A program made the position numbers and the translations under genes. This document shows positions 12,384 through 54,937 of a DNA stretch of 64,000 bases, one piece after another. The stretch is taken from positions 62,001-126,000 of the IMG/VR virus record IMGVR_UViG_3300021142_000002; one strand, given 5' to 3'. How positions within the stretch are numbered: the first letter of the stretch is position 1; every line of letters begins with the position of its first letter. A model generated the notes under the pieces. The model had not been told where the DNA came from and searched no databases. It worked only from the letters and a program-made list of their open reading frames with translations.

Positions 12384-12416
12384 AAAAAAAAAAGAGGATA
12401 ACATTAAGTTATCCTC
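12384..12416 (-). terminator. Rho-independent terminator
   Basis: GAGGATAAC/GTTATCCTC stem with an adjacent T10 on the minus strand. Confidence 0.8.
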
Positions 12417-12452
12417 CCTGACTACAATGAGTCAAGATTCCCCAGGAGATCC

Positions 12453-12626
12453 CTAGGATGTTTCACCATCTCCTTCAGTAGGAGATTCAGTGCCATCCGA
12501 GGATGAAGACTGGTTGTCAGCAGATGCTACTGGAGCATCTGCAATAATGTACTGAATAAAGGCATTGGCCGCGCCAGCGACCATGGCAGCTGCACCTGCA
12601 GCTACCATAATTGTTCTATAATTCAT
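12453..12626 (-). CDS. Small membrane/secreted protein (57 aa, not in ORF track)
   Basis: Manual translation MNYRTIMVAAGAAAMVAGAANAFIQYIIADAPVASADNQSSSSDGTESPTEGDGETS; GGAG RBS. Confidence 0.6.
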   Translation of the reverse strand: MNYRTIMVAAGAAAMVAGAANAFIQYIIADAPVASADNQSSSSDGTESPTEGDGETS

Positions 12627-12629
12627 TAT

Positions 12630-12734
12630 TTATTCTCCGGGCTGGTTTTGTGGTTTAGTTATTACTTCAATTATGGTGGTTAGGATAACCATATAGATGG
12701 TTAATCTCCCTACCACTTTAAAGAACTCAAACAT
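12630..12734 (-). CDS. Small membrane peptide (34 aa, not in ORF track)
   Basis: MFEFFKVVGRLTIYMVILTTIIEVITKPQNQPGE; strong AAGGAGG RBS. Confidence 0.65.
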   Translation of the reverse strand: MFEFFKVVGRLTIYMVILTTIIEVITKPQNQPGE

Positions 12735-12774
12735 GATATCCTCCTTATTAGGTTATACATGTAAATCCATTAAA

Positions 12775-12804
12775 ATAATATATATATATGAAAAAAATTT
12801 GAAT
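12775..12804 (-). promoter_or_regulatory. Early-promoter-like motif
   Basis: ATTCAA-N14-TATATATTAT upstream of the two small ORFs. Confidence 0.55.
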
Positions 12805-12863
12805 CCATTATTTATTATCTAAATTCAATATCTTTTGTCTAAACCTTTCAGGGACTCTATATA

Positions 12864-14543
12864 ATGAATGAAAATAAATCTAGTATTAAAAGGGAATTTG
12901 TATTTGGTACTTACTGCCCTAATAGAGTAGATAGAAATAAAGATGCTGTTTTTGTTAAAGAGATTTTACATAAAGATGGTATGATAAAAAGAAACTTAAG
13001 GATGATAGAAAACTATCAAAGACCTTTTTATATTACTAAACCAAATTACAGAGATCATCAGCAAAAGAAAGAATTTGAACATTTAGCTAAATTAGATACT
13101 TACTATACGAATCAAGCTAATTTATCTAAAAGTATCTTTAAAGTACTCAACGGCTATAGACCTAATAATTATATTTCTATTCAGGATATGAATGAATCAC
13201 CTTATGTCTATGGCACTGATGTAGCTACACCAGTACTGATAGCTAATGATTATAAAACTAAATATCCAGATTTATTAACACCTTCAACACTGGCTGTGCT
13301 GGACTATGAAACTGATGTAGTCATGGGAAAAGAATATATCATTTCTGGTGTATTAGCTATGAAAGATAAACTACATATTGCTGTATCTAAAGAGTTTTTA
13401 GGTTACTTAGCTAAAGATGCTAAAGAACTGATTAAGCAAGCTTTAAATAAGTATCTATCTGAGTACATGGAAAAAAATAAGATAGAGCCTATTATTACTA
13501 TAGTGGATAAGCCCTCTGACGTAGTATTAGCTTTAATTAAATCAGCTCATACTTGGCAACCTGACTTTGTAGCTTGCTGGAATATTAAGTTTGATATGAA
13601 TAAAATGCTAGAAGCTTTAGCGATGGATGATATAGACCCTGCTTTTGCTTTTAGTGATCCATCAGTACCTCCTGAATATAGATTTTTTAGATGGCGAGAA
13701 GATAAGGATAAAAAATCAACAGCCAGTGGTAAAGTAACCCCTAAACATATAGCTGATAAATGGCATACAGCAACCTGCCCTGCTAGTTTTTATTTTATTT
13801 GCTTAATGGCAGTCCATAGAACAGTAAGGGCCAGAGATCCTTATAGATCTAGTTATAAATTAGATGCTGTATTAAAAGACTTTGGTGTGGGTGGGAAATT
13901 AAAGTTTGAAAATCTACAAGAAGGTTTAACAGAGTTAGATTGGCATAAGGAAATGCAAAGGATGTATAAGATAGAATACATGGTCTATATGGCATGGGAT
14001 GGTGGGTCAGCGATAGAGCTAGATCAAAAAACTAAGGATGCTAGTAACTCTGTTAGAGGAATGATTGGATTATCTGAATTAAGTAATATGAAAAGTAATC
14101 CAAAAAGACTATCAGATGACATGTACTTTGAACTATTAAAAGAAGATAAAGTATTAACGGGTACTAGCAACTGTATGCGTGATGAACTCGATGCTCTTAC
14201 ACCATCCCTTGTAAATTGGATAATAACTTTACCTTCTGAGTTAGAACATCACATGGGTAGAGCATTAATCAATGAATATCCAAAGATGCATACTAACATT
14301 ACTACCCATGCCTTTGACATTGACGTAGTATCGGCCTATCCTAAAACAGAAATAGCTTTAAATGTTTCTAAAACGACTAGAGCATTAGAATTATGTAAGA
14401 TTAGCGGATTAAGTGATAAACAGCAAAAGTCATTGGGCATTAATATGACTAATGTTAAAGTCAATGCCTTATCATTAGCTGAAAAAGCTTATAAGTTTCC
14501 TGATGTAGATGTTTTACTACAAGCTTTTATAAATCAAATGTAA
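12864..14543 (+). CDS. Split family-B DNA polymerase, exonuclease-containing subunit (phiKZ gp82-like)
   Basis: ExoI LDYETD, ExoII WNIKFD, ExoIII YMAWD, and motif A-like FDIDVVSAYP. Confidence 0.8.
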   Translation: MNENKSSIKREFVFGTYCPNRVDRNKDAVFVKEILHKDGMIKRNLRMIENYQRPFYITKPNYRDHQQKKEFEHLAKLDTYYTNQANLSKSIFKVLNGYRPNNYISIQDMNESPYVYGTDVATPVLIANDYKTKYPDLLTPSTLAVLDYETDVVMGKEYIISGVLAMKDKLHIAVSKEFLGYLAKDAKELIKQALNKYLSEYMEKNKIEPIITIVDKPSDVVLALIKSAHTWQPDFVACWNIKFDMNKMLEALAMDDIDPAFAFSDPSVPPEYRFFRWREDKDKKSTASGKVTPKHIADKWHTATCPASFYFICLMAVHRTVRARDPYRSSYKLDAVLKDFGVGGKLKFENLQEGLTELDWHKEMQRMYKIEYMVYMAWDGGSAIELDQKTKDASNSVRGMIGLSELSNMKSNPKRLSDDMYFELLKEDKVLTGTSNCMRDELDALTPSLVNWIITLPSELEHHMGRALINEYPKMHTNITTHAFDIDVVSAYPKTEIALNVSKTTRALELCKISGLSDKQQKSLGINMTNVKVNALSLAEKAYKFPDVDVLLQAFINQM

Positions 14544-14559
14544 AAAAAAAGACATAGTA

Positions 14560-14592
14560 TTCCATACAGTAGCATTATGTTACTGTATGGAA
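14560..14592. terminator. Hairpin terminator between convergent genes
   Basis: TTCCATACAGTA...TACTGTATGGAA inverted repeat; A-tract on the left. Confidence 0.65.
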
Positions 14593-14604
14593 ATATGTTT
14601 ATTC

Positions 14605-15087
14605 TTATTCTTCTTTTTTAAACAAAGGGTCTAGTAACTCTACACAAGCTATTTGTAGAATTTCTTCAGTTGCTTCATAAGCATCCACTAATGATATCCT
14701 AGATAGAATGATATTGGCTATTAAGCTAAAGCATTCTCTAACACATTCAAACCATTCTTTATTAATACCGTTTAAACTGTACATATAAGCTACTACACCC
14801 TCTTTGTTAAAGAGATATTGTATTAGCCCTACCATTACATCGGTATTCATTTTATTGTCTTTAACAGCATTGTAGAGGTTTGTAATGTAATTAGTAATTA
14901 GATCATCACTAAAGCATTTATCAATAACTGTAGAGTTTTCTTTAGTTAATTGCAATAGTCTTTGAAATAACTCTTTTAAGTTAGTTTCTTCAATAGGCAT
15001 TCTGCAATTATAATCAGCTTTACTATTGGTATAGAAGACTGAAACAACGTAGTTTATTTTGTCAATTGCTAGTTCATTTAGTTTCAT
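14605..15087 (-). CDS. Hypothetical protein
   Basis: 160-aa ORF overlapping the upstream ORF by 4 nt. Confidence 0.6.
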   Translation of the reverse strand: MKLNELAIDKINYVVSVFYTNSKADYNCRMPIEETNLKELFQRLLQLTKENSTVIDKCFSDDLITNYITNLYNAVKDNKMNTDVMVGLIQYLFNKEGVVAYMYSLNGINKEWFECVRECFSLIANIILSRISLVDAYEATEEILQIACVELLDPLFKKEE

Positions 15088-15338: not shown

Positions 15339-15404
15339 TGGATAATGTAGTTATCAACATTTTTTGAATCTGTCCATACTATTTAAGTAATTAGGTACAA
15401 AAAA

Positions 15405-23591: not shown

Positions 23592-23625
23592 GTACCATAC
23601 GGTAGCCTAGGCTACCGTATGGTAC
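23592..23625. repeat. 34-bp perfect palindrome
   Basis: GTACCATACGGTAGCCT|AGGCTACCGTATGGTAC between convergent ORFs. Confidence 0.85.
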
Positions 23626-23629
23626 TATG

Positions 23630-23788
23630 TTAATGTTTTACTATATAAACATACAGTAAAACAACTATCACGTTTATACTCCACATCCAGTCAGGATATG
23701 GCATATTCTTTCTTATGTTACCAATATACCATGGTATATTGGCTAAGAATATTAAACCTAAGATTGGCAAGGCTGTTCCTATTATCAT
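23630..23788 (-). CDS. Small two-helix membrane protein (52 aa, not in ORF track)
   Basis: MIIGTALPILGLIFLANIPWYIGNIRKNMPYPDWMWSINVIVVLLYVYIVKH; GGAG RBS. Confidence 0.65.
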   Translation of the reverse strand: MIIGTALPILGLIFLANIPWYIGNIRKNMPYPDWMWSINVIVVLLYVYIVKH

Positions 23789-23822
23789 TTTATTACTCCA
23801 TTGATTAAAGGATATATCTAAT

Positions 23823-23852
23823 CAATGATGTATATATTCAAGTTATTTGAAT
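23823..23852 (-). promoter_or_regulatory. Early-promoter-like motif
   Basis: ATTCAA-N14-TACATCATTG. Confidence 0.55.
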
Positions 23853-28686: not shown

Positions 28687-30684
28687 TTACTTTACTTTCA
28701 AAATATCATCTAGCATATGTTTGGTCTTTAACTTACCAGTACGCCAGTGTATACTTAATAAAGATTTATACTGTTCTTGATGGGCTAACATTGAAGTCAA
28801 TGTCCTGTTATTAATAACCCAGGGTAATACTTTAAAGTTAAAATCATCACCAGGTCTTGGTAATTCATTTAACCTTTCTGGATTATTAGCTACTACCATT
28901 AGTGATCTAACAAATATTTCAGCTTGAGTGATATTAAACTCTTGACCATTATCTTTATTTAATCGTCTTCTTAGAACAGTAATTAATCCTTCAATAGCAC
29001 CTGTTACTGTTTTAAAGTCTGTTATCTTTTCATTAGATTTTCCTTGTGGTTCAATATAGGATTTAACATCATTAAAGAATGACATGATGTTATCACCTTT
29101 TCTTGGAATAATAAATACAGGTGTATTTACATTCCAGTTCTTTAAAGTAAATTCTACATAGTTCTTACCAGAACCCCAACCATGTTCTTTAAGATAAGTT
29201 AGTACTTGGGTAGACAGTGAAATGCCCATGCCCGATACTTCTAATTTCTTTAAGATATCAAAAGATCCAGACATCATACCTGACTTATCAGTTAAACTAA
29301 TACCAAGCTCTGGTATTCGAGTAATTCGGCTAGGCGATAGTTCGGTCGCATCAATGTGTAGAATTTGAGATAGATACTTTACATAATCAGAATCTATTCT
29401 AATCAATACATTTCCCTTACTAGCAAATTCAGTTAAGAATAACCTATCAGGCTGTTTTGGACTAATCCTAAACCATCGACTAGAATTTGAATCCAGTGTT
29501 AGTTTCTTGGATATGGAAGATCCCTCATAATGTTTAGTAGACATGATGATTTGGGATATCATAGCACACAGTGGTGTGGATAAAGAAAAGCCTAGATTAC
29601 TCTTAGGTGGAATAATTAAACTAATCCAACCTAAACAGACTTGACAGACTTCTTGAGCATCATGACATCCGCAGCCAGTAATTGTTCTATACTCAATGAC
29701 TTTACCAATCAGATGATCAATGCTGTCCCAGATTAATACAGGCTTATCAGTTTGCTCGTCCATATAGTACTTACCCTTTAATAGAGTAAGATCATCTTTA
29801 CTGACTAATCTTTTAGCGGTAATATAATTACTACATCCTCCTTCTATATAGACCTGTCTAAGAATAACAGAAGCTGCTAACTGCACCTTTCTATTAAACC
29901 ATTCAGACTGTTGCAATGGATCAGTATTCATGATAGAAGCTCTAGAGGCTGATCTAGATTCAATCATAGAGTCATATAAGTTATCTAATCCTTCACCATA
30001 GCCTACATCAATTGGATAAGGGAATACTGAACCATCAATGTCATGTACATAGCCACGAGGTCCTACCATTTGAATAACCTGACCTTTATTAACTAATCCA
30101 GCCATCGTCAGCTTCTTAATACCATTATGTTTTAGGTATTCTCTATCGGTATATAAAACCTTACTAACAACAGAATGTACTTTAGCAATTTCTTCTGCAC
30201 AGACATGTTCTGCGTAATCTGATTCTTCTGCTAATTTTCTATAATTATCTTTAGCTTCAACAATAGTAAATTCTTCCATTATCTCTATTAGATCAAACAA
30301 AGAAACTGTTGTTACATATTCAGATAGTTTTAAACAGCTAACATTATAGATCTCATTAGTAACTTCGTAAAAAGCTTTACTAAGATCCCATACATCAGCT
30401 CTAATACCTTTACTATTTAAATCATTAAATATGTGCCAGAATATTCTAGAGCCTATTTTTCTATGGGTAGATGCTCCAAAATCACCCACTAAACCAGTCT
30501 CTGAGATTAGTTCAGCACCTGGAAAACAACGATAGAGTTCCCAATATATCCAGCTAAGAATAATATTGGGTCTAGTCATTACTATCTCTTTATCAGAGAA
30601 TCTAATTAAATGTTCATGATCTGGTAAATTCCATACATCATTAAAACTATATTTATAAACTAGATCATTAGCTTCAATACTCAT
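28687..30684 (-). CDS. rpoC: Non-virion RNA polymerase beta' subunit, C-terminal part (phiKZ gp74-like)
   Basis: QMVGPRG, ESRSA, SEWFNRK, CGC...VCQVCLG and QIIMSTKH beta'-like motifs; synteny. Confidence 0.85.
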   Translation of the reverse strand: MSIEANDLVYKYSFNDVWNLPDHEHLIRFSDKEIVMTRPNIILSWIYWELYRCFPGAELISETGLVGDFGASTHRKIGSRIFWHIFNDLNSKGIRADVWDLSKAFYEVTNEIYNVSCLKLSEYVTTVSLFDLIEIMEEFTIVEAKDNYRKLAEESDYAEHVCAEEIAKVHSVVSKVLYTDREYLKHNGIKKLTMAGLVNKGQVIQMVGPRGYVHDIDGSVFPYPIDVGYGEGLDNLYDSMIESRSASRASIMNTDPLQQSEWFNRKVQLAASVILRQVYIEGGCSNYITAKRLVSKDDLTLLKGKYYMDEQTDKPVLIWDSIDHLIGKVIEYRTITGCGCHDAQEVCQVCLGWISLIIPPKSNLGFSLSTPLCAMISQIIMSTKHYEGSSISKKLTLDSNSSRWFRISPKQPDRLFLTEFASKGNVLIRIDSDYVKYLSQILHIDATELSPSRITRIPELGISLTDKSGMMSGSFDILKKLEVSGMGISLSTQVLTYLKEHGWGSGKNYVEFTLKNWNVNTPVFIIPRKGDNIMSFFNDVKSYIEPQGKSNEKITDFKTVTGAIEGLITVLRRRLNKDNGQEFNITQAEIFVRSLMVVANNPERLNELPRPGDDFNFKVLPWVINNRTLTSMLAHQEQYKSLLSIHWRTGKLKTKHMLDDILKVK

Positions 30685-30695: not shown

Positions 30696-32726
30696 TTAAG
30701 CATTTTTAATCTCTAAGCCGAATGAAAACAAAACATGGTTGATAAACATAAGGGGTCTAGAAGTACCCATCTTCATATCCATAATAGGCTCAAGTCTAGA
30801 GGGTGTACGAGAGGCTAATAAATTAGCCACTACATTTTTATGGGATTCTGGGCTATTAGACATGGTTAATAATTCTGCGATAATTTCTCCTCCCATATAC
30901 GCGCCATACATTCTTACTTCAGTTTCAGAAAATACTTTAACAGCTTGTACCTTACTAGGACTGCCCCATCTAGATATTTTATTAGGGCCAGCTAAAACCC
31001 CATGATGTTGTAGTTTACCAGAAGATACCGACATTGGATGCTGGTCAGTCTTTTCTAGAATGATGATTTGCTCAACGCCAATAAAGACATTATCCTTAGT
31101 GGTAACCATATTCCCTGCTAAATCTCTATAGGATACAGGTCCATAGCAAGGTTTAAATACTTTGAGTATTCTATTTAATATACCTATATCTACGTGTTCA
31201 CTGTCTACAGGAATATATAAATAAATCCCATCTTGAATAACAGTATCTAAATGTACCTTTCTTTGCTCAAATGTTCTGTAATTAGAATTAATGGTATTAA
31301 ATGTTAAAGGTGATGCTACTTCATAAAACTCCATTAATTTACCAAATACAGTATCGAAGGGTAAAGATTGATAATTGTTTCTAATCCACGTTGTTAAGTC
31401 TCTAGAAACTCCACCGATAAAGCCTTCATAGAGCTGACCATAATTCATCCTAGACACTGTCGATTTAGAAAACTTAATTAAATCTGCTCTATTACCGTAG
31501 GCGTCAACGGGCATATCTTCATCTTTAAAGATATAGCAAATGACTCCCTTATTTCCGCAATTTCCGGTCATCTTTGATCCAAGACTGATAGGCTGTTCTC
31601 TATAACAGAATATTTCTACTCTATATTCATCTAATGGTATCCTTTTTCGAGTACGTCTTATGATACCGCCTTGAGGTACTTTATACTTAGTTAAATTAGG
31701 TTTATCTGCAATCGCTCTAGTTATTAGCTGAGTTAATCTAGGTGATATATTTAAATTCTTGTCTGATCGTACCAGACTCTCATAGATGTTTACTATACCG
31801 GCATAATACTCACTGGCATGAGCTATATACCTTTCTGGCTGTACCGCCATGGCAGGTGGTGTTAATGGCTTAGCTTTAGTTTCACCAATACCAGATTCTA
31901 CGATAATATCATAGACTGTAGCACCTGGTACACCATAGATTCTAATATCATGCACCATGTCAATTTCCATGAGTGCTTTATTACTCATTTCTATTGCATC
32001 AAATGCATCATCATATTCAGCAAAGGCAAAGACTAATCCATCTTCTCTAATTTTATCACCGACTTCAGGATAGGGCTTAAAATGATTCTCATCCCCATAT
32101 GTGTTTTTAGGGTACATTTTCTTACCCCATTCACCGACTACTGAAGGCAATTCTAATAGACTTGCTCTTTCGCAAAATGATTCAGATGCACCATAGCCGT
32201 CTTCAATAGAGGCGGGTACTGATAGATTAACTACATTACAACTTAAACCATTACTATAAATACCACCGTCTTTAACATTAGGTGATTTAGCCAATATAGT
32301 ATCCTTTGCTATATGAGAGCCTGCTCTTAATTGCTTGACAATAGGATTTAATACCATTCGATTACCATATGTTCGATGTCTGGTATCGTATGTGTTAATG
32401 TCTAGACAATCATATTTGCCCGTTATCTGGCATTGATAGATAATTGTAATAGATGGGTTTTCTTTTATCTGATATTCATCTAATGTCTTTTTAAACTTTT
32501 GATGAACAGAAATAACAATACCATCTGTTGGCATCGTTACATTAAAGGCTTCTAGTTGAGTTTCTAAGCCTGTTAATATTCTGGGTATATCAGATTTCTT
32601 AGGCGTTACAGCTTGTGCTAAATGATGAGATAGCATAGCTAGTCGACTACTACTATTAAACCTAATAAAAGGATTAACAGCAGCCATAGCACCATAGGTG
32701 ACCAACGTATTTCTTCTTTTTAGCAT
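30696..32726 (-). CDS. rpoB: Non-virion RNA polymerase beta subunit, C-terminal part (phiKZ gp71-73-like)
   Basis: NSSSRLAM, SIEDG, GSKMTGNCGNKGVI, DMPVD, RMNYGQ, VFSETEVR. Confidence 0.9.
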   Translation of the reverse strand: MLKRRNTLVTYGAMAAVNPFIRFNSSSRLAMLSHHLAQAVTPKKSDIPRILTGLETQLEAFNVTMPTDGIVISVHQKFKKTLDEYQIKENPSITIIYQCQITGKYDCLDINTYDTRHRTYGNRMVLNPIVKQLRAGSHIAKDTILAKSPNVKDGGIYSNGLSCNVVNLSVPASIEDGYGASESFCERASLLELPSVVGEWGKKMYPKNTYGDENHFKPYPEVGDKIREDGLVFAFAEYDDAFDAIEMSNKALMEIDMVHDIRIYGVPGATVYDIIVESGIGETKAKPLTPPAMAVQPERYIAHASEYYAGIVNIYESLVRSDKNLNISPRLTQLITRAIADKPNLTKYKVPQGGIIRRTRKRIPLDEYRVEIFCYREQPISLGSKMTGNCGNKGVICYIFKDEDMPVDAYGNRADLIKFSKSTVSRMNYGQLYEGFIGGVSRDLTTWIRNNYQSLPFDTVFGKLMEFYEVASPLTFNTINSNYRTFEQRKVHLDTVIQDGIYLYIPVDSEHVDIGILNRILKVFKPCYGPVSYRDLAGNMVTTKDNVFIGVEQIIILEKTDQHPMSVSSGKLQHHGVLAGPNKISRWGSPSKVQAVKVFSETEVRMYGAYMGGEIIAELLTMSNSPESHKNVVANLLASRTPSRLEPIMDMKMGTSRPLMFINHVLFSFGLEIKNA

Positions 32727-44605: not shown

Positions 44606-47087
44606 CGTATTGTTCAGATAGAGTCGTTAATTCTATCCCGTAGTGATTAACTACTGCTAATACTCTCGTATTAGACCAGATCATGTCTTTACCGATTAGT
44701 ATTTCTTTAAAATACTAATGAAGGTACCTCCCATTTCTTCCCACTTGGGTTCTACTCCGCATAACCGGATGATCGTTGAACTTTTTCCATATACAAATAC
44801 TGTACTTAGGAACTTAGCTGCATAGTTATCTCTATTTACTATATTTTCAAACTGTGGCATTATCTTTCGATAATACAGTAGTATAGTAACTTAACAAGAT
44901 GTTCTAGCAATTAAAGAGGGTTCTATCTTAATATTTCTATTAAGTAGGGCATTTGCATACCATCATACGTATTGTTCAGATAGAATCGTTAATTCTATCC
45001 CGCAGCTTTACCTGCATCGCTAACACTTTCATGTTAGACCAGACTATATCTTCTACTAACTAGATTTAATTAGTAGCCCACCACTTCGAGATTACTTAAT
45101 CTCTACACCACGCAACCGGTTAGTCGTTGAACTTTACTCATATGCTCAGTAGAGCACTTAGAGTCTTAGCTGCTGATTGCCCAATCTTTATTATTTTTAA
45201 ACATTCATATTTCTTTTCAAAAATACAGTAGTTAATAAAGCTCTAAGGGGTTTCCAGCAATTCAATGGGATTCTTTATAACCTTACGACTATAAAGGACT
45301 CTAATTTCACTTATACTTAATTTAAATACCATCATAAAAAAGATGCTAGATAAAATAGGAATTATATAAGCATTTGATATCTGCATTGCATCCACGCAGC
45401 ACTAGAGTAGAAAAACTGATTGTTTTATCCTTTAAATCATTTTTTACTTTAGTTATATAAAAACATTGTGCAGATAGTCTTCCAAGACTAGGCATATATC
45501 TTTAAATAAGGTCGTTAATCTTATTTCTACTAATGTAGCTCTTACTCTCGTAAGATGTTGAGACTATATCATTACCTTTTACTTACTTTGTAAGTAAGCA
45601 TTCAGGCACACACCACTTCGAGATTACTTAATCTCTACTCTACTCGATTCAATTTATTCAATCGTCTTTCGATAGTCGTTGAACGTTCTCCTTATCTCGA
45701 TAATAGACTTAGGAGCTTCGCTGCTGATTGACTCTATTTACTATTTTTCAAACTATGGTATTATCTTTCAATAATACAGTAGTATAGTAACCTAACGAGT
45801 GATTCCAGCAATTAGATGTGTTTAATCAACAATATTTCTATTGAGGGGAACCCAATAACTTATGGTTATATGAAATAATAGTTTACAGAAATAAATCTGA
45901 TGATATTAAACTATAAATTATTTATATAAATTCCGTTGAAATAAAACCATAATCCCTCTGCATGGTAAAGGCGTTATTTCAAATTTTGTAACTCGTTTTA
46001 TTTCTGGCCCTTCATTAATTAGTTCTTGTATAATTTCGTCTATTAACTTATTATACATATTGCCACTATTTTCAACTAAATCATAGGCTCTTTTAGAACT
46101 AAAATTTCGCTGCATTAATTTAGAAACAATATGAACCTTTAACATCTCTAGACCCTGGGCCCAGGGTACATGTATTTCACTATATGAATGAGGTACATTT
46201 AAAGATGTGATCACCGCCCGCATACAAAAGTGTGATCTAGAACAATATAACTGTCCTCTAAACCATCCCTTCTTTAAACAGAATGTACCCTTAATCGTTG
46301 CAACATGATAAGCTACTAGATTAGCTATAACAGAGACTACTTTAGTTTCTATCTGGTTATCCGTTAATGGCTTAGACCTAGGCATGCTAATGTTAGCGAT
46401 TGTTCTACAAGCATCAATAGCGCCTGTAATAGATCGTTTATCTGCCCATGCGCCTGTTTGGGTATTTTCTACAATTAACATAGCCTTGGTAGGCACGGGT
46501 AAATACTTTGGAAATATTTTATTTCTAATGGCTTTAAGAAAGTAACAATAATCCAAAGCTTTATTCTTAGTTAATATAGGCAATATCTCTAAGAATTTAT
46601 CAAAGTTTCTAATAAAGTAATTTAATCCTCGCTCCCAACCTATGGATTCTAAATACTTTATTTTCTTTTGTGACTCTTTTGTTAAGTTACTAGGTACTTT
46701 AGCTCTGGAGTTTGTTAAATACTCCATGATGGAATAAGAGCCTCCTAGATGAGTATTTAACTGTACCCAGACTTCAGGTACAATAAATCCATCTATTCCA
46801 TCCGGTACTCTTATCCATGTTCGCATATCTATATTGCCTTCAGCAGGATAAGTAACAGGGGTATTGCAATTATCACAATACTTGTTTTCTTTAAATCCAT
46901 ACTTAGTATGCCCACAAGCGCAAGTAGGTACAGAGCCCAATACATCTGATTCATAAGTCGTTAGAATTAATGAATTAAAGGCAGCTCTATCTTCCTCTGT
47001 TTGATAAGGCACATCATTTAATACAACTGGTTTGACTACCTTAGTAAAAACAGTATCAAAGTCCGGTATATCAATGTAGTTTGACAA
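44438..47087 (-). CDS. rpoC: nvRNAP beta' catalytic subunit (phiKZ gp55-like), 4 exons, 482 aa spliced: join(47087-45930, 45492-45379, 44967-44959, 44605-44438)
   Basis: Zn motif CACG..CDNC in exon 1; the spliced junctions rebuild FQRN|PSL and GCNAD|YDG|DEMN; all phase 0; TTG start with GGAG RBS. Confidence 0.88.
44606..44958 (-). ncRNA. Group I intron 3 (353 nt, ORF-less, IA-like)
   Basis: 5' exon ends in U with P1 GGU/AU-GCAA-AU/GCC; P AAUUGCUAGAA; R GUUCAACGAUCA; S GACAUGAUCU; GAGA-capped P9; terminal G. Confidence 0.85.
44959..44967 (-). CDS. nvRNAP beta' exon 3: 9-nt microexon TAT GAT GGT (YDG)
   Basis: Preceded by the omega-G of intron 2, ends in U, and supplies the middle Asp of the catalytic DxDGD. 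Confidence 0.8.
44968..45378 (-). ncRNA. Group I intron 2 (411 nt, ORF-less, IA-like)
   Basis: P AAUUGCUGGAA; Q AAUCAGCAGC; R GUUCAACGACUA (45121-45132); S GAUAUAGUCU (45041-45050); GAAA-capped P9; terminal G. Confidence 0.85.
45379..45492 (-). CDS. nvRNAP beta' exon 2 (38 aa)
   Basis: PSLGRLSAQCFYITKVKNDLKDKTISFSTLVLRGCNAD. Confidence 0.85.
45493..45929 (-). ncRNA. Group I intron 1 (437 nt, ORF-less, IA-like)
   Basis: P AAUUGCUGGAA; Q AAUCAGCAGC; R GUUCAACGACUA (45673-45684); S GAUAUAGUCU (45561-45570); 5' exon ends in U; terminal G. Confidence 0.85.
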
Positions 47088-47099: not shown

Positions 47100-47192
47100 C
47101 TATAATAAATGTTCAAATAGATAATTTCCTATGGCAGAAGCTGTAATAAAAATAACTAATATATAGACTAACTCCCTGATAAAATGATACAT
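47100..47192 (-). CDS. Small membrane peptide (30 aa, not in ORF track)
   Basis: MYHFIRELVYILVIFITASAIGNYLFEHLL; AAGGAG RBS. Confidence 0.6.
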   Translation of the reverse strand: MYHFIRELVYILVIFITASAIGNYLFEHLL

Positions 47193-47196
47193 TGAC

Positions 47197-47331
47197 TTAC
47201 TCCTTTCTTTTATAGAAAAGAACTGTTAAACGCTTAGCGATAAAGTTAGCAATAGATTTTTCAGATGTTATCATTACTATTAAGAAAATGATAGCCAATA
47301 TAAAGGCCAATAAATCTGGATCAATTATCAT
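47197..47331 (-). CDS. Small membrane peptide (44 aa, not in ORF track)
   Basis: MIIDPDLLAFILAIIFLIVMITSEKSIANFIAKRLTVLFYKRKE; TAATG coupling to the upstream ORF. Confidence 0.6.
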   Translation of the reverse strand: MIIDPDLLAFILAIIFLIVMITSEKSIANFIAKRLTVLFYKRKE

Positions 47332-47537
47332 TAATGTCCTATTTGTAAAATGTTAAGTATAGTAGAAATAGATGAAATAATAACCGTTAATAAAAACCCT
47401 ACTAATAAAGGAATAGAAACATAAGGCACTTTATTATTAGCATCTAAATCCTTTAATTCTAAACGAATGATGTTTCTAATGAAGTAGGTTAATCCTAGCA
47501 TCATTATTATTAACATCAAAGAAATAATATACATCAT
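47331..47537 (-). CDS. Small two-helix membrane protein (68 aa)
   Basis: Two hydrophobic segments; GGAG RBS. Confidence 0.65.
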   Translation of the reverse strand: MMYIISLMLIIMMLGLTYFIRNIIRLELKDLDANNKVPYVSIPLLVGFLLTVIISSISTILNILQIGH

Positions 47538-47574
47538 AAAAATTCTCCAAAATTATTGACTAGATTTAAATGGG

Positions 47575-47691
47575 TTATTGAGTGAGCCCAAATAAAGAAA
47601 GTAATTTAGCCGCACTAGATGGATAAAAATTATATATAGTTATAGCTATAATTGTTGTTACTACCAGCACATAGCTGAGTATAAATAGCAT
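47575..47691 (-). CDS. Small membrane peptide (38 aa, not in ORF track)
   Basis: MLFILSYVLVVTTIIAITIYNFYPSSAAKLLSLFGLTQ; AGGAG RBS. Confidence 0.6.
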   Translation of the reverse strand: MLFILSYVLVVTTIIAITIYNFYPSSAAKLLSLFGLTQ

Positions 47692-47730: not shown

Positions 47731-47760
47731 AGGGATAGCAGATTTAAATCTGCTATCCCT
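47731..47760. repeat. 30-bp perfect palindrome after chmA
   Basis: AGGGATAGCAGATTT|AAATCTGCTATCCCT. Confidence 0.85.
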
Positions 47761-47771: not shown

Positions 47772-49757
47772 TTATCTTTGGTTCCAAGTAGAAGCCAAAG
47801 GTGATGTTGTTCCATAGTGCTGTGGATTATAACCTGGTTGGTTATAATTTCTTTGGTAGTAAGAAGAAACACCATGACCTTGCAGCGGAGTAATGTACTC
47901 GCTATTAAATGATTGACGTTGTACCATAGAAGACATATCAGATAGACCTTCAATAGTTACAGCAATGCCGCATTGTGCGTGCATTTCTTCAATAGTATTG
48001 ATGAAATCATTATTGAAGAAGAACCGTGAAATCAATCCAGTCACTGTAAAGTTAGGCGCCATTTGTTTACGGATATTACGTTTGATATCCATGTCTTCTA
48101 AAGAGTTATTGCCTGGATAGAAACCTAAGGCAAATGAATCAAAGAATGTCATGTCGCCTGCTGAATAACTTAAGCAGGTCAGATAATCAATAGTTCGACC
48201 ATCACGTGCTCTACCATTTGTATCAGTGTAATAACCGGCATGTAAATCCACACGCAGCGTAGAATTAGTAGCACGATCGTATTGCATGATAGGTTTATTC
48301 TTTGGCAGCCATAATTTGCTGAATACACCGCCTGAATAAGCATCCAATTCATTAATAATAATAGATTCTTCTTTAGAACCCGGTACAGCACCTGCAAACA
48401 AAGTTTGTAACCATTCAGTTGGACTGCCTTTAATGATATCCATAGCGACCAGCACAGTACGAGTGCAATACATAGCTGCCATCGCTTGAGCAGTTACTTT
48501 ATCTTCACCCACCATAGGGTCAGAGCCGCTAACAACAGTTAGTTCTTTAGGAACAAATTGTTTTTGTGGCATTGGCAATGGATCATGTTCAAGACCTAAG
48601 ATACCTAAGTTAGGTTTCAACTGATTATCACCTACAAAAGGTTCAAAGATAGTAGCCCATTTATTTTGGGTAGGGTCTAGTAATGGTAATAATGATGGCA
48701 GCGCTAATAGCTGAGTCAACAAATTATCATTAGACCGACTAGATGCACCTAAAGATGAAGTGTTTGTAATCACAAACACTGGATCATAGCCTGGAGTAGG
48801 TACTGGGTAACCAGTATAAGGTGCTTGCTGAGTAGGTACTCTGCGGTAGAAATCCATATAGCCCGCAATAGCCGTTAATGCAATTTCATCTTGTTGATTA
48901 CTAATAGCACGAACATCAGTGCTAATTGGTTTACCTGCTTGGCGTGCATAAAGGACCACGTTAACATCGGCGACATAAGGCTGATTAACAGATGATAAAT
49001 AAATGCCGCCTGGAGTGACATCAAACTTAGATACCAACTGTACAGTATTGTTAGCCAATACATTAACAGTGACTGGCGAGGTTGGTAAGTTTTGTTTGCT
49101 GCGCATAGTAGCGCTGATGGCAGCCAAGGCATGGTCATAGAACTTAGCGAGTGAATTAATATTCAACAACTCAACCGTTTTTGGCACCACCATGTTAGAT
49201 GCACAAACACTGCCATTTGATTTACCCGATACATTGCCAATAACATTTTCAACGATTTCTCGAGTTTGTTTGTTCCAGAATAGAGCTGGAAACATGTCAA
49301 TTTCAACCGAGCGATTATTTCTACCAATGTTTGCATGCTTATTAGCTAGTGGGCGAGCCATTTCTTCAAACATTAATGTACTATAGTACACTAAGTTTGT
49401 TCTGCTACATTTAAACCAAAGTGCAACAATCGCAATTGGAATGCGTGGATCTTCAACTGGAAGGACTTTAACTTGTAGAATGGTTGGATTATTTTCAACC
49501 CGTTTTTGCACATCCGCCAATGCTTTCAGCAATTCAGTAGTATTACCTGAACCTACATTGCCAGATGCAGTAACTGAAGATAAACCCATTAAGGCATCAA
49601 AACCGACTGTAGCTGCTGAACCTGCATTGCCACTTACATAGGCTGATGCTTGAGATTCAAACGTATCATTAGTTTTGTGCTGTTGCTGATTGCCACGACC
49701 TGTGGTTAGAATTACTTCATCTTCCTCAAAGCCTGGGCGATTAGTAGTATTATTCAT
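47772..49757 (-). CDS. chmA: Chimallin, phage nuclear shell protein
   Basis: 661 aa; position upstream of the gp55-like beta'; C-terminal segments (HAGYY..GRARDGRTIDYL; FTVTGLISRFFFNNDFINTIEEM..CGIAVTIEG) parallel the recalled ChmA sequence; disordered termini. Confidence 0.85.
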   Translation of the reverse strand: MNNTTNRPGFEEDEVILTTGRGNQQQHKTNDTFESQASAYVSGNAGSAATVGFDALMGLSSVTASGNVGSGNTTELLKALADVQKRVENNPTILQVKVLPVEDPRIPIAIVALWFKCSRTNLVYYSTLMFEEMARPLANKHANIGRNNRSVEIDMFPALFWNKQTREIVENVIGNVSGKSNGSVCASNMVVPKTVELLNINSLAKFYDHALAAISATMRSKQNLPTSPVTVNVLANNTVQLVSKFDVTPGGIYLSSVNQPYVADVNVVLYARQAGKPISTDVRAISNQQDEIALTAIAGYMDFYRRVPTQQAPYTGYPVPTPGYDPVFVITNTSSLGASSRSNDNLLTQLLALPSLLPLLDPTQNKWATIFEPFVGDNQLKPNLGILGLEHDPLPMPQKQFVPKELTVVSGSDPMVGEDKVTAQAMAAMYCTRTVLVAMDIIKGSPTEWLQTLFAGAVPGSKEESIIINELDAYSGGVFSKLWLPKNKPIMQYDRATNSTLRVDLHAGYYTDTNGRARDGRTIDYLTCLSYSAGDMTFFDSFALGFYPGNNSLEDMDIKRNIRKQMAPNFTVTGLISRFFFNNDFINTIEEMHAQCGIAVTIEGLSDMSSMVQRQSFNSEYITPLQGHGVSSYYQRNYNQPGYNPQHYGTTSPLASTWNQR

Positions 49758-49896: not shown

Positions 49897-49926
49897 AGAT
49901 AATGTATCTGTTAGATATTTTTGGAT
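49897..49926 (-). promoter_or_regulatory. Early promoter of chmA
   Basis: ATCCAA-N14-TACATTATCT. Confidence 0.65.
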
Positions 49927-52370: not shown

Positions 52371-52372
52371 TA

Positions 52373-52431
52373 TTTTCTCCTATTTAATATTAACATCAGA
52401 TAGATAATGTAAGTATTAAAATAACTCCAAT
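52373..52431 (-). promoter_or_regulatory. Early promoter + leader/RBS cassette (copy 1)
   Basis: TACATTATCT box at 52402-52411; 36 bp identical to 58543-58578. Confidence 0.7.
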
Positions 52432-52453
52432 TTTAAACAAAAAAAAACATAAG

Positions 52454-52487
52454 TGTGGATACTAGGGAGTACTCCCTAGTATCCACA
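52454..52487. repeat. 34-bp perfect palindrome
   Basis: TGTGGATACTAGGGAGT|ACTCCCTAGTATCCACA. Confidence 0.85.
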
Positions 52488-52495
52488 AAAGCAGT

Positions 52496-52687
52496 TTAGT
52501 CTATAACAGAAATAATGTTTTCTAACTTAATGTTTCTATATGGATTACTATTACTCTCCCGTGTTAAATCATTCTTCACACAAGTAATAGAGTATTCTGT
52601 AAATTCATTGCCTTCTGAATCTAGACTAATAGCAGCTGAAACAATCATGCCAACTTTAGCTGAAATTCCTTTTTCATCTTTCCACAC
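52496..52687 (-). CDS. Small SH3/KOW-like hypothetical protein
   Basis: 63+ aa; AKVGMIV pattern; start uncertain. Confidence 0.4.
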   Translation of the reverse strand: MWKDEKGISAKVGMIVSAAISLDSEGNEFTEYSITCVKNDLTRESNSNPYRNIKLENIISVID

Positions 52688-52698
52688 AACAATCTGAC

Positions 52699-52926
52699 CT
52701 AATCTATAATCAAATTTAACAGTTTCTGCCTGATGTATACGATACAGATAAATAAGAAGCAGTTCATCACTATTGCTAAGGGAGATATAACGTGATAAAC
52801 ATCGCCGCTTTTTCTATCAGAAATTTTAACTTTGACAGTTCTTTCTTTTATTAACTCTACCGAGCCGGAATAGAAAACTCCATTTTCTATAAAACTAACT
52901 TCATCACCTCTTCTAAGTTCATTCAT
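52699..52926 (-). CDS. Small SH3/KOW-like hypothetical protein (start revised to 52926)
   Basis: MNELRRGDEVSF...YSGSVE; GGAG RBS. Confidence 0.5.
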   Translation of the reverse strand: MNELRRGDEVSFIENGVFYSGSVELIKERTVKVKISDRKSGDVYHVISPLAIVMNCFLFICIVYIRQKLLNLIID

Positions 52927-52927
52927 T

Positions 52928-53452
52928 TTATTTCTCCTCTGTTTCAAACAAATCTTTATAGTTTTCAATTCTAGCAATATCATTAACATCTAAATCTGTG
53001 GTAATGTGGGAGAAATCTGGTTTTCCGCGATTACCCATTTTAGCTACAGAGTAATGCTCACGTATAGAACCATTACATCGTTTAGAAAGTCCTTGACCTG
53101 CAATAAAACCAACTTCCACAAAACCATTAGACGTGTGTCTAAATATAACGGCTTCATCTAACTGATATTTAAAACGAGTAGAGTTAGCGCCAAAGATTAA
53201 GCCAAATTCTTCTTTAGTGATAACATCATCTATCAGAATTATCCATGATTTTCCATTAATAATTTTTTCTGGAATACCTTGGTTAAGTAAAGGCTTAACA
53301 TATACATAATGTCTTCCTTCTTCAGGATTACCACACACTACTTCAGCCGCTATTAAAATACCACAATGTATATAAAATACATTATCTCCTACTTTAATTC
53401 CCCTTTCGTTTGGGGCTATAGAGGCTACATCAATATCTTTTTTCTTACTCAT
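52928..53452 (-). CDS. Two-domain SH3/KOW-like hypothetical protein
   Basis: IKVGDNVFY and FKYQLDEAVIF repeats; GGAG RBS. Confidence 0.6.
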   Translation of the reverse strand: MSKKKDIDVASIAPNERGIKVGDNVFYIHCGILIAAEVVCGNPEEGRHYVYVKPLLNQGIPEKIINGKSWIILIDDVITKEEFGLIFGANSTRFKYQLDEAVIFRHTSNGFVEVGFIAGQGLSKRCNGSIREHYSVAKMGNRGKPDFSHITTDLDVNDIARIENYKDLFETEEK

Positions 53453-53550
53453 TTTTTTCTCCTAAATTAAAACTAACTTATAATACAAAAATTATTTCTT
53501 CTGAGGTGATTGTTCTTGCACAGCAGCCAAGATCAGGTGTTCCATCTTGG

Positions 53551-53895
53551 TTAACATTTAATAAGTAACAATCGAAATTCTTCATTAACTCTTTTGCTAA
53601 AATGTTCTATTTCATCTGCAGATGAATAGAGCTTTTTGGGTTCAAATAATGCATTTAATACCTCATCACGAAGAAGTAGTAATTTAGTTATACTTTCCTC
53701 AGCATGAATTATCTGCTTCCTTTCAATTGCATATTTTAGTCTAGCTAAAATAAACCGTAAATCCTGCAGTGTCAACATATACCGCATGTTATCATTATTT
53801 AATTTAAATATGAATCTATTGCGAAGATAAAAAGTATCAGCAGAATAAATAAAATATTTATGTTTATTAAACCTTTCTTTGTTTCTTTTTAACAC
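53551..53895 (-). CDS. Hypothetical protein
   Basis: 114 aa. Confidence 0.55.
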   Translation of the reverse strand: MLKRNKERFNKHKYFIYSADTFYLRNRFIFKLNNDNMRYMLTLQDLRFILARLKYAIERKQIIHAEESITKLLLLRDEVLNALFEPKKLYSSADEIEHFSKRVNEEFRLLLIKC

Positions 53896-54078
53896 GTTTA
53901 ATTTCTCCTATTAACATCTTTCGTCATCTGGAAACCAAGGCTCTTCAAAAGCCTCTAAAATTGTCTCTGTGGGTATTTCTGCAATTACCATAGGCTTAGT
54001 ATCACTTTCCAATAATAATTCAATAGAGAGCATTTCAGGATCATTATCAGGTATTTATCTATAAACTTTAACTCTACT

Positions 54079-54345
54079 TTACATCTTTCTTCTCCCCATT
54101 AGTAATAACACTTTAGGATCAAAAACAAACTTTTCATTAACCCAGCCCACAACAGACTTTTCAATCGTATCCAAATCACGATCTACTCGCTGAATATAAT
54201 ACTCAGTTACTTTATTTACCGTATTATCAGACATAATCACTTCACTTAACCGTATCAGTGTTACCCTACCTAAAGACAGATGGTCACCATTAGTTTCTAC
54301 TAATACAAAATCATTTATCCCAAACTGTGTTTCAAAAATAGCCAT
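54079..54345 (-). CDS. SH3-like hypothetical protein
   Basis: QFGINDFVLV..GRVTLI pattern. Confidence 0.55.
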   Translation of the reverse strand: MAIFETQFGINDFVLVETNGDHLSLGRVTLIRLSEVIMSDNTVNKVTEYYIQRVDRDLDTIEKSVVGWVNEKFVFDPKVLLLMGRRKM

Positions 54346-54389
54346 CTTTATTTTCCCCTAATATTACTATTGATATTAATACATCTAAT

Positions 54390-54419
54390 AGATAATATAT
54401 AAATAACTATATATTGATT
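54390..54419 (-). promoter_or_regulatory. Early promoter
   Basis: AATCAA-N14-TATATTATCT. Confidence 0.6.
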
Positions 54420-54547
54420 AATATTAGTATTATTAATATCTACTATAAATACTAGTATTAAAGATTACTAGTATTATTAAATGAATAATAGAAACTATAC
54501 GTTTCTATTATGCTATATATTTACGTACCTATTATTACCTAAATGAG

Positions 54548-54573
54548 GATTAATACACTTAAGTGTATTAATC
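54548..54573. repeat. 26-bp perfect palindrome
   Basis: GATTAATACACTT|AAGTGTATTAATC. Confidence 0.8.
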
Positions 54574-54753
54574 ACTATTAGTATACATTAAAGAAGTATT
54601 ATTTATATACGTTAATGTAGTAGTCTATTATATACGCTAAGGAAGGTTGTTTATATATTGTTTTTACCCCCACTCCAGACCACGATTCCATCAACCCCTC
54701 GCAACCAGATTTCTCTAGTCGCGGGTAATGTATTAGTTATTCACTAAGACATA

Positions 54754-54840
54754 CTATACTGGTAATAGTAATATAAAAATAAAGAAAAAAAAAAGAATAA
54801 GTAATACAGTGCCAATAACCAAATAAATTAATTCAGTCAT
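54754..54840 (-). CDS. Hydrophobic peptide (28 aa, not in ORF track)
   Basis: MTELIYLVIGTVLLILFFFFIFILLLPV; GGAG RBS; promoter-like motif upstream. Confidence 0.6.
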   Translation of the reverse strand: MTELIYLVIGTVLLILFFFFIFILLLPV

Positions 54841-54907
54841 TTTAATCTCCTGCCCTTATAGGGACTTAAATGTTATAGTTAAATGGATTACTGGTGTAAT
54901 TCCAATT

Positions 54908-54937
54908 AAATGGTATATACATGAAAATAATTTGAAT
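54908..54937 (-). promoter_or_regulatory. Early-promoter-like motif
   Basis: ATTCAA-N14-TATACCATTT. Confidence 0.5.

What the first reader, a model, noticed from the sequence alone, without database searches (positions are those of the whole stretch)
12384..54937. Stand-alone mini-operons of tiny membrane peptides, each with its own promoter
Three units missed by the ORF track share one design: promoter motif, strong RBS, small hydrophobic ORF(s). They are 12630-12734 + 12453-12626 (34 and 57 aa, ending at a terminator), 23630-23788 (52 aa, ending at a palindrome) and 54754-54840 (28 aa). Their upstream promoter halves are very similar (ATTCAAAT...). Inference: immediate-early inner-membrane effectors for superinfection exclusion, early phage infection vesicle remodelling or anti-defence.
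Basis: partly seen in the sequence, partly recalled or inferred. Interest (0 to 1): 0.62.

Follow-up and report, generated by a model that had tools for sequence, protein, structure and literature searches.

The report
Small early membrane-peptide genes of a chimallivirus
An uncultivated nucleus-forming jumbo phage carries many tiny membrane-peptide genes behind its ordinary early promoters; most look real, but they have no known relatives or function, which is common in large phages.

Summary
The three units exist at the stated coordinates, all on the minus strand. Each has a Shine-Dalgarno site, and units 1 and 2 end at a terminator or palindrome.

The "shared design" is not special to them. 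It is the phage's general early-gene layout. A core TAYATYAT-N6-G occurs at 31-33 intergenic minus-strand sites, against 2 in genes. It matches the virion-RNA-polymerase early consensus of phage AR9.

Units 1 and 3 belong to a 7-copy promoter-plus-leader cassette. The other copies drive unrelated genes of 151-213 aa (one with a frame break). This resembles the PeSL cassettes of T4-type phages.

The genome holds about 12 such ORFs. Hydrophobic, SD-preceded small ORFs in intergenic DNA number 10, against 0.24 expected.

Coding support:
- Strong for the 57/64-aa ORF, from codon usage.
- Good for the 34-aa ORF (pN/pS 0.23 between strains).
- Circumstantial for the 52-aa ORF.
- Weak for the 28-aa ORF.

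All are ORFans, so function is only inferred: early inner-membrane accessory proteins. This is a new member of a known kind, of modest interest.

The parts
12768..12804 (-). Unit 1 early promoter: ATTCAAAT (12804-12797), core TATATTAT (12782-12775), predicted +1 G at 12768. This is a truncated copy of the 7-copy cassette.
12630..12734 (-). 34-aa single-TM ORF (unit 1a), SD AAGGAGG at 12746-12740.
   Evidence: Strain L008/L009 keeps it open at 34 aa despite 9 substitutions and a 14-nt deletion; pN/pS 0.23, Fisher p 0.023.
12453..12626 (-). 57-aa ORF (unit 1b): N-terminal Ala/Gly-rich TM helix plus an acidic Ser/Asp/Glu tail. It is 64 aa in other strains (TAG to CAG at 12455).
   Evidence: Codon score 0.645, above all 433 wrong-frame ORFs; 48% GC in a 32% GC genome.
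12382..12419 (-). Intrinsic terminator of unit 1 (12-bp stem, then a T run).
23818..23852 (-). Unit 2 early promoter: ATTCAAAT (23852-23845), core TACATCAT (23832-23825), predicted +1 G at 23818. An inverted repeat overlaps the core and +1.
23630..23788 (-). 52-aa ORF with two TM helices and a basic loop (unit 2), SD GGAG at 23799-23796.
   Evidence: Identical on at least 22 contigs. No relative anywhere.
23592..23625 (.). Perfect 34-nt palindrome centred on CCTAGG. It is a bidirectional terminator-like element shared with the convergent acetyltransferase gene and is one of a 14-copy genome family.
54841..54937 (-). Unit 3 promoter-leader cassette: ATTCAAAT (54937-54930), core TATACCAT (54917-54910), predicted +1 G at 54903, a 5' stem-loop, a second stem-loop with compensatory changes, and SD AGGAG (54851-54847).
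54754..54840 (-). 28-aa extremely hydrophobic ORF (unit 3). It contains a T10 run and has no basic residue. It is the weakest coding candidate.
   Evidence: Invariant among strains.
54400..54753 (-). ORF-poor, hairpin-rich stretch downstream of unit 3. It includes a possible 30-aa second ORF (54691..54599) and ends at the next early promoter (core at 54399).
47100..47691 (-). They lie between the chimallin and RNAP beta genes.
   Evidence: Absent from the same junction in Vibrio phage sm033 and from four distant relatives.
47731..47760 (-). 13-bp hairpin directly after the chimallin stop codon and before the cluster.

Best explanation
The units are ordinary early transcription units of an uncultivated nucleus-forming jumbo phage (chimallivirus). 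Their cargo is very small inner-membrane proteins specific to this lineage.

Transcription (inferred from motifs): it starts at a G six bases after an AT-rich core (TAYATYAT). This is the signature of promoters read by the injected virion RNA polymerase in AR9 and phiKZ-type phages. A TTCAAR element 13-15 nt upstream is present in about 40% of these promoters, including all three units.

The transcript starts with, or soon reaches, a stem-loop. It carries a strong Shine-Dalgarno site and ends at a hairpin terminator.

Units 1 and 3 use copies of a 7-copy promoter-plus-leader cassette that has been spread to unrelated genes. Such a cassette can act as a portable expression module and as a recombination point.

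The peptides (one or two TM helices, 28-68 aa) are probably inserted into the host inner membrane within minutes of infection. By analogy only, they act there as small modulators of host envelope proteins, in host take-over or exclusion of competing phages. They are unlikely to be lysis proteins.

Shown: the ORFs, the motifs, their statistics and the lack of relatives. Inferred: the early timing, the membrane location and the function.
For: Phage identity: chimallin, three RNAP beta-like genes and a phiKZ-type DNA polymerase.

Promoter:
- TAYATYAT-N6-G occurs at 31 intergenic minus-strand sites, 2 genic minus-strand sites and 0 intergenic plus-strand sites.
- G at +7 is the most informative flanking position.
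- The sites precede chimallin, an RNAP beta gene and about 30 other genes, with leaders mostly of 25-70 nt (chimallin 135 nt).
- It matches the AR9 early consensus and the phiKZ rule of a TSS 6 nt downstream (PMC5312081; PMC7598289; PMC8244752).
- TTCAAR at fixed spacing in 13/33 sites against 1.8% background.
- The same motif occurs in a relative with 55% DNA polymerase identity.

Cassette: 7 copies. Cargo proteins are unrelated. Compensatory changes occur in the SD-proximal stem. Assemblies break at copies.

Coding:
- 10 observed against 0.24 expected hydrophobic SD-ORFs, and a 16:1 strand bias.
- Codon score of the 57-aa ORF.
- pN/pS 0.23 for the 34-aa ORF, with the frame kept across a 14-nt deletion.
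- Overlapping stop/start and tight packing in the chimallin cluster.

Terminators.
Against: There is no homologue of any peptide. There is no conservation by position in relatives.

Codon scores of the hydrophobic ORFs are intermediate (0.01-0.25, against 0.42 for true genes and -0.09 for wrong frames). This may reflect TM amino-acid composition or non-coding status.

The 28-aa ORF could be a chance ORF behind a cassette ATG in T-rich DNA.

TM calls rest on hydropathy windows only.

The TTCAAA-N15-YATTAT geometry could also be read as a weak sigma-70 promoter.
Confidence: 0.55

Rival explanations
1. Some of the small ORFs, above all the 28-aa ORF of unit 3, are not genes. In this reading the cassette there is an orphaned or regulatory promoter-leader, it drives a structured non-coding transcript, and the hydrophobic ORF is a by-product of T-rich sequence behind the cassette's built-in SD and ATG.
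For: The SD and ATG belong to the cassette itself. Another copy is followed by only a 9-codon ORF. 28 codons is within chance for 32% GC DNA (my estimate). The ORF contains a T10 run, has no basic residue, and its codon score of 0.135 is reached by 21% of wrong-frame ORFs. The 361 nt downstream fold far better than shuffles (z -4.85) and contain several perfect hairpins.
Against: As a class such ORFs are about 40-fold over shuffle expectation and all lie on the coding strand. The 9-codon case looks like a homopolymer frame error in front of a real gene. No Rfam family matches the region.
Confidence: 0.2
2. The promoters are read by the host sigma-70 RNA polymerase (TTCAAA as -35, YATTAT as -10), as in T4 early genes, and not by a virion RNA polymerase.
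For: The consensus scan reports TTCAAA-17-TATTAT for unit 1. The distance from the hexamer to the conserved G fits sigma-70 geometry (my reading). T4 PeSL cassettes use sigma-70-like promoters (PMC2839356).
Against: Only 13 of 33 sites have TTCAAR, and the usual spacing to YATTAT is 15 nt, which is short for sigma-70. The core is nearly identical to the AR9 virion-RNAP consensus. Sigma-70-like matches are not enriched in these regions. Published work cited holds that phiKZ-type phages do not need host RNAP. The phage encodes multisubunit RNAP genes.
Confidence: 0.12
3. The peptides are lysis proteins: holin, antiholin, pinholin or spanin-like.
For: They are small proteins with one or two TM helices.
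Against: They sit behind early-type promoters. Their neighbours are NUDIX, DNA polymerase, acetyltransferase, chimallin and RNAP genes, not an endolysin. No holin family was hit in PHROGs, Pfam or NCBIfam. The tails are acidic or absent rather than basic.
Confidence: 0.06
4. They are type I toxin-like or addiction peptides that depolarise the membrane and are controlled by RNA structure or an antisense RNA.
For: They are very short and very hydrophobic. Unit 3 has a structured leader, with a stem-loop next to the SD.
Against: The same leader drives ordinary soluble proteins. No antisense promoter motif occurs on the plus strand (0 intergenic plus-strand sites). No toxin family was hit.
Confidence: 0.05

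Closest known systems
Virion-RNA-polymerase early promoters of phiKZ-type and AR9 jumbo phages
   Same: An extended AT-rich core around -10 (here TAYATYAT, often TATATTATCT). A conserved G start 6 nt downstream, as in AR9 AAATATATATTAT-N6-G(+1). About 30 copies per genome, nearly all on one strand. Leaders of tens of nucleotides (PMC5312081, PMC7598289, PMC8244752).
   Different: A second element, TTCAAR, sits 13-15 nt upstream in 13 of 33 sites. Nothing was tested biochemically, and start sites are predicted, not mapped.
PeSL (promoter-early stem-loop) mobile regulatory cassettes of T4-type phages
   Same: Repeated composite modules of a terminator stem-loop plus an early promoter, placed in front of unrelated and often ORFan genes. 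The sequence difference between close strains sits at a cassette-driven unit (PMC2839356, PMC4122927).
   Different: The promoter is of the virion-RNAP type, not sigma-70. The cassette extends through a conserved 5' leader, SD and ATG. There are only 7 copies. There is no evidence of mini-circles or of cassette-to-cassette recombination. The cassette was not found in other IMG/VR phages.
Small early membrane proteins of large lytic phages (from my own knowledge, not tested here): T4 Imm and Sp for superinfection exclusion, T4 Ac, and SPO1 host-takeover proteins such as the TM protein gp56
   Same: Very small proteins with one or two TM helices, early promoters and strong ribosome-binding sites, non-conserved, often clustered.
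   Different: No sequence similarity to any PHROG family. These are shorter (28-68 aa). Their function is unknown.
Bacterial small membrane regulators and type I toxins (from my own knowledge): AcrZ, MgrB, SgrT, Hok, TisB
   Same: The size range and the single TM helix. A plausible mode of action is binding a larger membrane protein or disturbing the membrane.
   Different: No family match. No antisense partner was seen. The context is a phage early gene.

Membership tests
phiKZ/AR9-type virion-RNAP early promoter | Highly conserved AT-rich element of about 10 nt centred near -10, over-represented upstream of operons | tested here: met
   TAYATYAT-N6-G: 31 intergenic minus-strand sites, 2 genic, 0 intergenic plus-strand. 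Units 1 and 2 fit it; unit 3 (TATACCAT) is included only under the looser TAYAYYAT (33 sites).
phiKZ/AR9-type virion-RNAP early promoter | Transcription start 6 nt downstream of the element (G in AR9) | tested here: inconclusive
   G is conserved at that position (highest flanking information content).
phiKZ/AR9-type virion-RNAP early promoter | Precedes known early genes (chimallin, non-virion RNAP subunits) | tested here: met
   Sites at 49906 (chimallin) and 32773 (RNAP beta, 676 aa).
phiKZ/AR9-type virion-RNAP early promoter | The phage packages its own multisubunit RNAP | not testable with these tools
   Three beta-like subunit genes lie in the window. Which set is virion-borne cannot be told from sequence.
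PeSL-like mobile regulatory cassette | Repeated composite of terminator stem-loop plus early promoter | tested here: met
   7 copies. Three copies (genome 190071, 150017, 140099) have a stem-loop directly upstream of the promoter.
PeSL-like mobile regulatory cassette | Linked to unrelated, mostly ORFan genes | tested here: met
   All-against-all BLASTP of the cargo proteins gives no hit below E 0.5.
PeSL-like mobile regulatory cassette | Sigma-70-like promoter | tested here: not met
   The core is the virion-RNAP type. Hence an analogue, not a member.
PeSL-like mobile regulatory cassette | Recombination between cassettes causes indels or replacements between close strains | tested here: inconclusive
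   Nearly all differences between strain L008 and the window over 3.7 kb lie inside unit 1 (12455-12779); the one exception is a 1-nt indel at 14541. No cassette-bounded swap was seen.
Holin / lysis cassette protein | Adjacent to an endolysin or spanin gene, late expression, charged C-terminal tail | tested here: not met
   The neighbours are replication, transcription and shell genes. The promoters are early-type. No holin family was hit.
Known superinfection-exclusion proteins (T4 Imm/Sp and similar) | Sequence membership in the family | tested here: not met
   No PHROG or Pfam hit at E below 0.001 for any peptide. Similarity of function is not excluded.
Type I toxin-antitoxin | Overlapping or adjacent antisense RNA gene that controls the toxin mRNA | tested here: inconclusive
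   There is no plus-strand promoter motif in intergenic DNA and no Rfam hit. A host-type antisense promoter cannot be excluded.

The most novel reading that the evidence does not exclude
The small TM peptides, especially the four inserted between the chimallin and RNA polymerase genes and probably co-transcribed with them, might be phage-made membrane factors. They might act on the early phage infection (EPI) vesicle or its hand-over of the genome to the protein nucleus. The review says no channel or remodelling factor is yet known for that step.
Probability: 0.05. Interest if true: 0.8.

Novelty: new member of a known kind. Interest (0 to 1): 0.3.

Why it matters
Small membrane ORFans behind early promoters are routine in large lytic phages. 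The peptides alone would therefore not surprise a specialist, and without relatives or expression data their function stays open.

The useful products are practical:
- A clean early-promoter consensus, derived from sequence alone, for an uncultivated freshwater chimallivirus. It has about 33 sites and a TTCAAR upstream element in about 40% of them.
- A PeSL-like promoter-leader cassette in a nucleus-forming phage.
- About a dozen small membrane-protein candidates, some missed by gene callers. These include a lineage-specific four-gene insertion at the conserved chimallin-RNAP junction and one unit that is the local hot spot of strain variation.

If any of them acted on the EPI vesicle or on host defences at the membrane, that would be of real interest. 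Nothing here shows that they do.

Tried and rejected
- Megablast of 8 kb against phage genomes: no match.
- tblastn of the 52-aa and 57-aa peptides against phage genomes at E up to 1: none.
- PHROGs, Pfam and NCBIfam scans of eight peptides: nothing below E 0.001.
- Word search of 5.8 billion protein clusters with the 52-aa and 64-aa proteins: only themselves.
- Exhaustive HMMER search of 1.84 billion representatives with the 52-aa protein: only itself.
- ESM Atlas with the 64-aa protein: best feature score 0.78, which is chance level; structure rows uninformative.
- The search for related loci with the DNA polymerase alone: nothing. With an alignment: only relatives at 48% identity or less.
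- Syntenic sites next to the DNA polymerase gene in relatives at 52-55% DNA polymerase identity lack the TM pair.
- No small TM ORFs follow chimallin in four IMG/VR relatives or in Vibrio phage sm033.
- The genome search on loci L010-L012: records not held.
- Population variation: the phage is nearly clonal, so units 2 and 3 and the chimallin cluster show no informative SNPs.
- Codon-usage test: decisive only for the 57-aa ORF. The model was trained on soluble proteins, so it is inconclusive for the TM ORFs.
- RNAalifold on the cassette leaders: the automatic alignment mis-registers the first stem-loop between subfamilies, so only the second stem is usable.
- Cassette pattern in IMG/VR: only fragments of this same phage plus chance hits.
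- tblastn of cassette cargo proteins against the unit regions, to test for a decayed paralogue: none.
- Structure and complex prediction were not run, because no binding claim is made.

Full report
CONTEXT

The window is bases 62001-126000 of a 220,366-bp IMG/VR virus record. It has about 32% GC and most genes lie on the minus strand.

It is a nucleus-forming jumbo phage (chimallivirus):
- ORF 49757..47772 is the nuclear shell protein chimallin (phrog_4795, E 5e-34; PF25677 on the identical protein).
- Three RNA polymerase beta-like subunit genes lie in the window (45918..47087, 28687..30684, 30696..32726).
- The DNA polymerase (12864..14543) is 35-39% identical to those of phiKZ-like phages.

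Nothing close is in GenBank phages. The nearest non-identical DNA polymerase among 5.8 billion protein clusters is 58% identical. The same phage, nearly clonal, occurs on more than 20 contigs of one metagenome series.

OBSERVATION

Their Shine-Dalgarno sites are AGGAGG, GGAG, GGAG and AGGAG, at 5-8 nt. Each has a hydropathy window above the classical 1.6 threshold; the 52-aa protein has two, separated by a basic loop.

Unit 1 ends at a textbook intrinsic terminator. Unit 2 ends at a perfect 34-nt palindrome. That palindrome is one of 14 similar palindromes centred on CCTAGG that sit 20-40 nt after gene ends across the genome.

THE PROMOTER

ATTCAAAT alone is not enriched in the window (11 found, 9.2 expected), but it is part of something real.

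- Intergenic k-mer enrichment pointed to TATATTAT. Aligning its 16 intergenic minus-strand sites showed a conserved G seven bases after the core.
- The pattern TAYATYAT-N6-G occurs at 31 intergenic sites on the minus strand. It occurs at 2 genic sites on that strand and at no intergenic site on the plus strand.
- Allowing TAYAYYAT gives 33 sites. Each lies 25-70 nt (chimallin: 135 nt) upstream of an SD-preceded start. The downstream genes include chimallin and a 676-aa RNAP beta gene.
- This is essentially the AR9 early consensus AAATATATATTAT-N6-G(+1). It also fits the statement that phiKZ-type virion-RNAP promoters are extended AT-rich elements with the start 6 nt downstream (PMC5312081; PMC7598289). 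Promoter number, strand bias and leader lengths resemble the phiKZ map (PMC8244752).
- TTCAAR lies 13-15 nt upstream of the core in 13 of the 33 sites, against 1.8% of background windows. All three units are among these 13.

But the "design" is the phage's general early-gene design. Predicted starts are 12768, 23818 and 54903. None is mapped.

THE CASSETTE

Units 1 and 3 share far more than a motif. They are copies of a promoter-plus-leader cassette of about 110 nt with seven copies in the genome, all on the minus strand. In order, the cassette holds:
- often a terminator stem-loop,
- TTCAAA,
- the core,
- the +1 G, which opens a 7-9 bp stem-loop,
- a spacer,
- a second short stem-loop abutting the SD,
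- the ATG.

The unit 3 copy has two compensatory pair changes in the second stem (CCTC/GAGG becomes CCCT/AGGG). The unit 1 copy is truncated after the first stem.

Four other copies drive proteins of 151-168 aa. One is followed by a 9-codon ORF and then a 213-aa ORF in another frame. These five cargo proteins show no similarity to one another. The cassette has therefore spread independently of its cargo. Metagenome assemblies break at the copies.

The closest known analogue is the PeSL cassette of T4-type phages (PMC2839356; PMC4122927). It differs in the type of promoter and in including the leader. The cassette was not found in other IMG/VR phages.

MORE PEPTIDES THAN REPORTED

It consists of four tandem hydrophobic ORFs at 47691..47100 (38, 68, 44 and 30 aa), one with an ATGA stop/start overlap. 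They are packed between the chimallin stop (followed by a 13-bp hairpin) and the TTG start of the RNAP beta gene.

In Vibrio phage sm033 the chimallin and RNAP beta genes are 93 nt apart with nothing between them. The cluster is therefore a lineage-specific insertion in a conserved junction.

Outside the window there are further small TM ORFs of 53, 49, 79 and 76 aa, the last directly behind an early promoter. The genome thus holds about twelve.

As a class they are well beyond chance:
- 10 hydrophobic SD-ORFs in 21.6 kb of intergenic DNA, against 0.24 in shuffles.
- 16 of the 17 intergenic SD-ORFs lie on the coding strand.
- Only 10 occur in wrong frames across 199 kb of genes.

CODING EVIDENCE, ORF BY ORF

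- 57-aa ORF: the codon score is 0.645, above every one of 433 wrong-frame ORFs. It has 48% GC in a 32% GC genome. It is 64 aa in other strains because TAG is CAG at 12455.
- 34-aa ORF: a divergent strain (L008/L009) differs from the window over 3.7 kb almost only inside unit 1. The differences are 12 substitutions, a 14-nt deletion and a 2-nt promoter indel; the one exception is a 1-nt indel at 14541. The ORF nevertheless stays open at exactly 34 codons. In its alignable 28 codons, 5 of 9 substitutions are synonymous (pN/pS 0.23, Fisher p 0.023). In the other two frames the same changes are mostly non-synonymous.
- 52-aa ORF: it has an SD, two TM helices with a basic loop, and its own promoter and terminator. 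It shows no polymorphism and has a neutral codon score.
- Chimallin cluster: operon-like packing; codon scores 0.05-0.25.
- 28-aa ORF: the weakest. The SD and ATG come with the cassette, the length is within chance, it contains a T10 run and has no basic residue. The next 361 nt are hairpin-rich (z -4.85). They contain a possible 30-aa second ORF, and the only local SNP (54674) is synonymous in that ORF.

My estimates that each is a real gene: 57-aa 0.9; cluster 0.85; 34-aa 0.8; 52-aa 0.75; 28-aa 0.5.

RELATIVES

None was found for any peptide by any method. Relatives with 52-55% DNA polymerase identity lack the unit 1 pair at the syntenic site, although one carries the same promoter motif. 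The peptides are lineage-specific ORFans.

MECHANISM

Shown: the anatomy and the statistics.

Inferred: the injected virion RNAP transcribes these units at the start of infection. The 5' stem-loop and strong SD give stable, well-translated short mRNAs. The peptides insert into the host inner membrane.

By the positive-inside rule:
- The 57/64-aa protein would expose its acidic tail to the periplasm.
- The 52-aa protein would be a helical hairpin with a cytoplasmic loop.
- The 44-aa protein would be N-out, C-in.

By analogy with T4 Imm/Sp, SPO1 host-takeover proteins and bacterial small membrane regulators (my own knowledge), the most likely role is modulation of host envelope proteins or exclusion of competitors. 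I give that specific role about 0.3.

A lysis role is unlikely, given the early promoters, the absence of an endolysin neighbour and the absence of any holin family match. An EPI-vesicle role is not excluded, but newly made peptides would reach the cell membrane first. The review only says that vesicle channels are unknown (PMC12908238).

The concentration of strain differences in unit 1 fits either an arms-race target or a recombination patch next to a cassette.

VERDICT

The "special design" turns out to be the phage's standard early promoter and leader. This is a new member of a known kind, with interest 0.3.

Noticed in passing
window 44657-45867, minus strand: Three group I introns (Rfam RF00028; 91, 68 and 54 bits) lie directly 3' of the 389-aa RNAP beta-like ORF 45918..47087. 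That ORF matches only positions 1-380 of a 478-position profile, so the RNA polymerase gene appears split by three introns.
   Followed up: no
genome-wide; in the window at 23592-23625 and, by palindrome centre, at 56386 and 58622: A family of 14 perfect 24-34-nt palindromes centred on CCTAGG (mostly AGCCTAGGCT) lies 20-40 nt after gene ends. The arms differ between copies but always pair. They are terminator-like elements without U tracts. GCCTAGGC is the most enriched intergenic 8-mer.
   Followed up: partly
window 47517-47531, minus strand: A perfect early-promoter match (TATATTAT-N6-G) overlaps codons 2-5 of the 68-aa ORF. It could be an internal promoter for the 44-aa and 30-aa ORFs and the RNAP beta gene downstream.
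   Followed up: no
L065:560-630 (genome 149860-149930), outside the window: One cassette copy is followed by a 9-codon ORF and then a 213-aa ORF in another frame. One extra A in the A7 run after the ATG would join them. This is a homopolymer assembly error, a broken gene or a frameshift site.
   Followed up: partly
window 54400-54760, minus strand: This ORF-poor stretch after unit 3 folds much better than shuffles (z -4.85) and has four or five perfect hairpins. It includes a 50% GC segment and a possible 30-aa ORF (54691..54599) with a GAGG SD. The SNP at 54674 is synonymous in that frame.
   Followed up: partly
window 23800-23828, minus strand: A 12-bp inverted repeat (z -3.5) overlaps the core and predicted +1 of the unit 2 promoter. 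It cannot be wholly in the RNA if the start is at 23818, so it may be a protein-binding operator rather than an RNA hairpin.
   Followed up: no
window 12455: The stop codon of the 57-aa ORF is polymorphic. TAG occurs in the window and L007; CAG in L006, L008 and L009 gives 64 aa.
   Followed up: yes
genome 138702-139231 and 195603-196494, outside the window: There are further small ORFs of 53, 49, 79 and 76 aa with TM segments. The 76-aa one lies directly behind an early promoter. A 40-aa ORF without a clear TM segment follows another early promoter.
   Followed up: partly
window 53911-54033, minus strand: A 40-aa acidic, non-hydrophobic small ORF was called by gene finders after the 88-aa gene on all strain contigs.
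   Followed up: no
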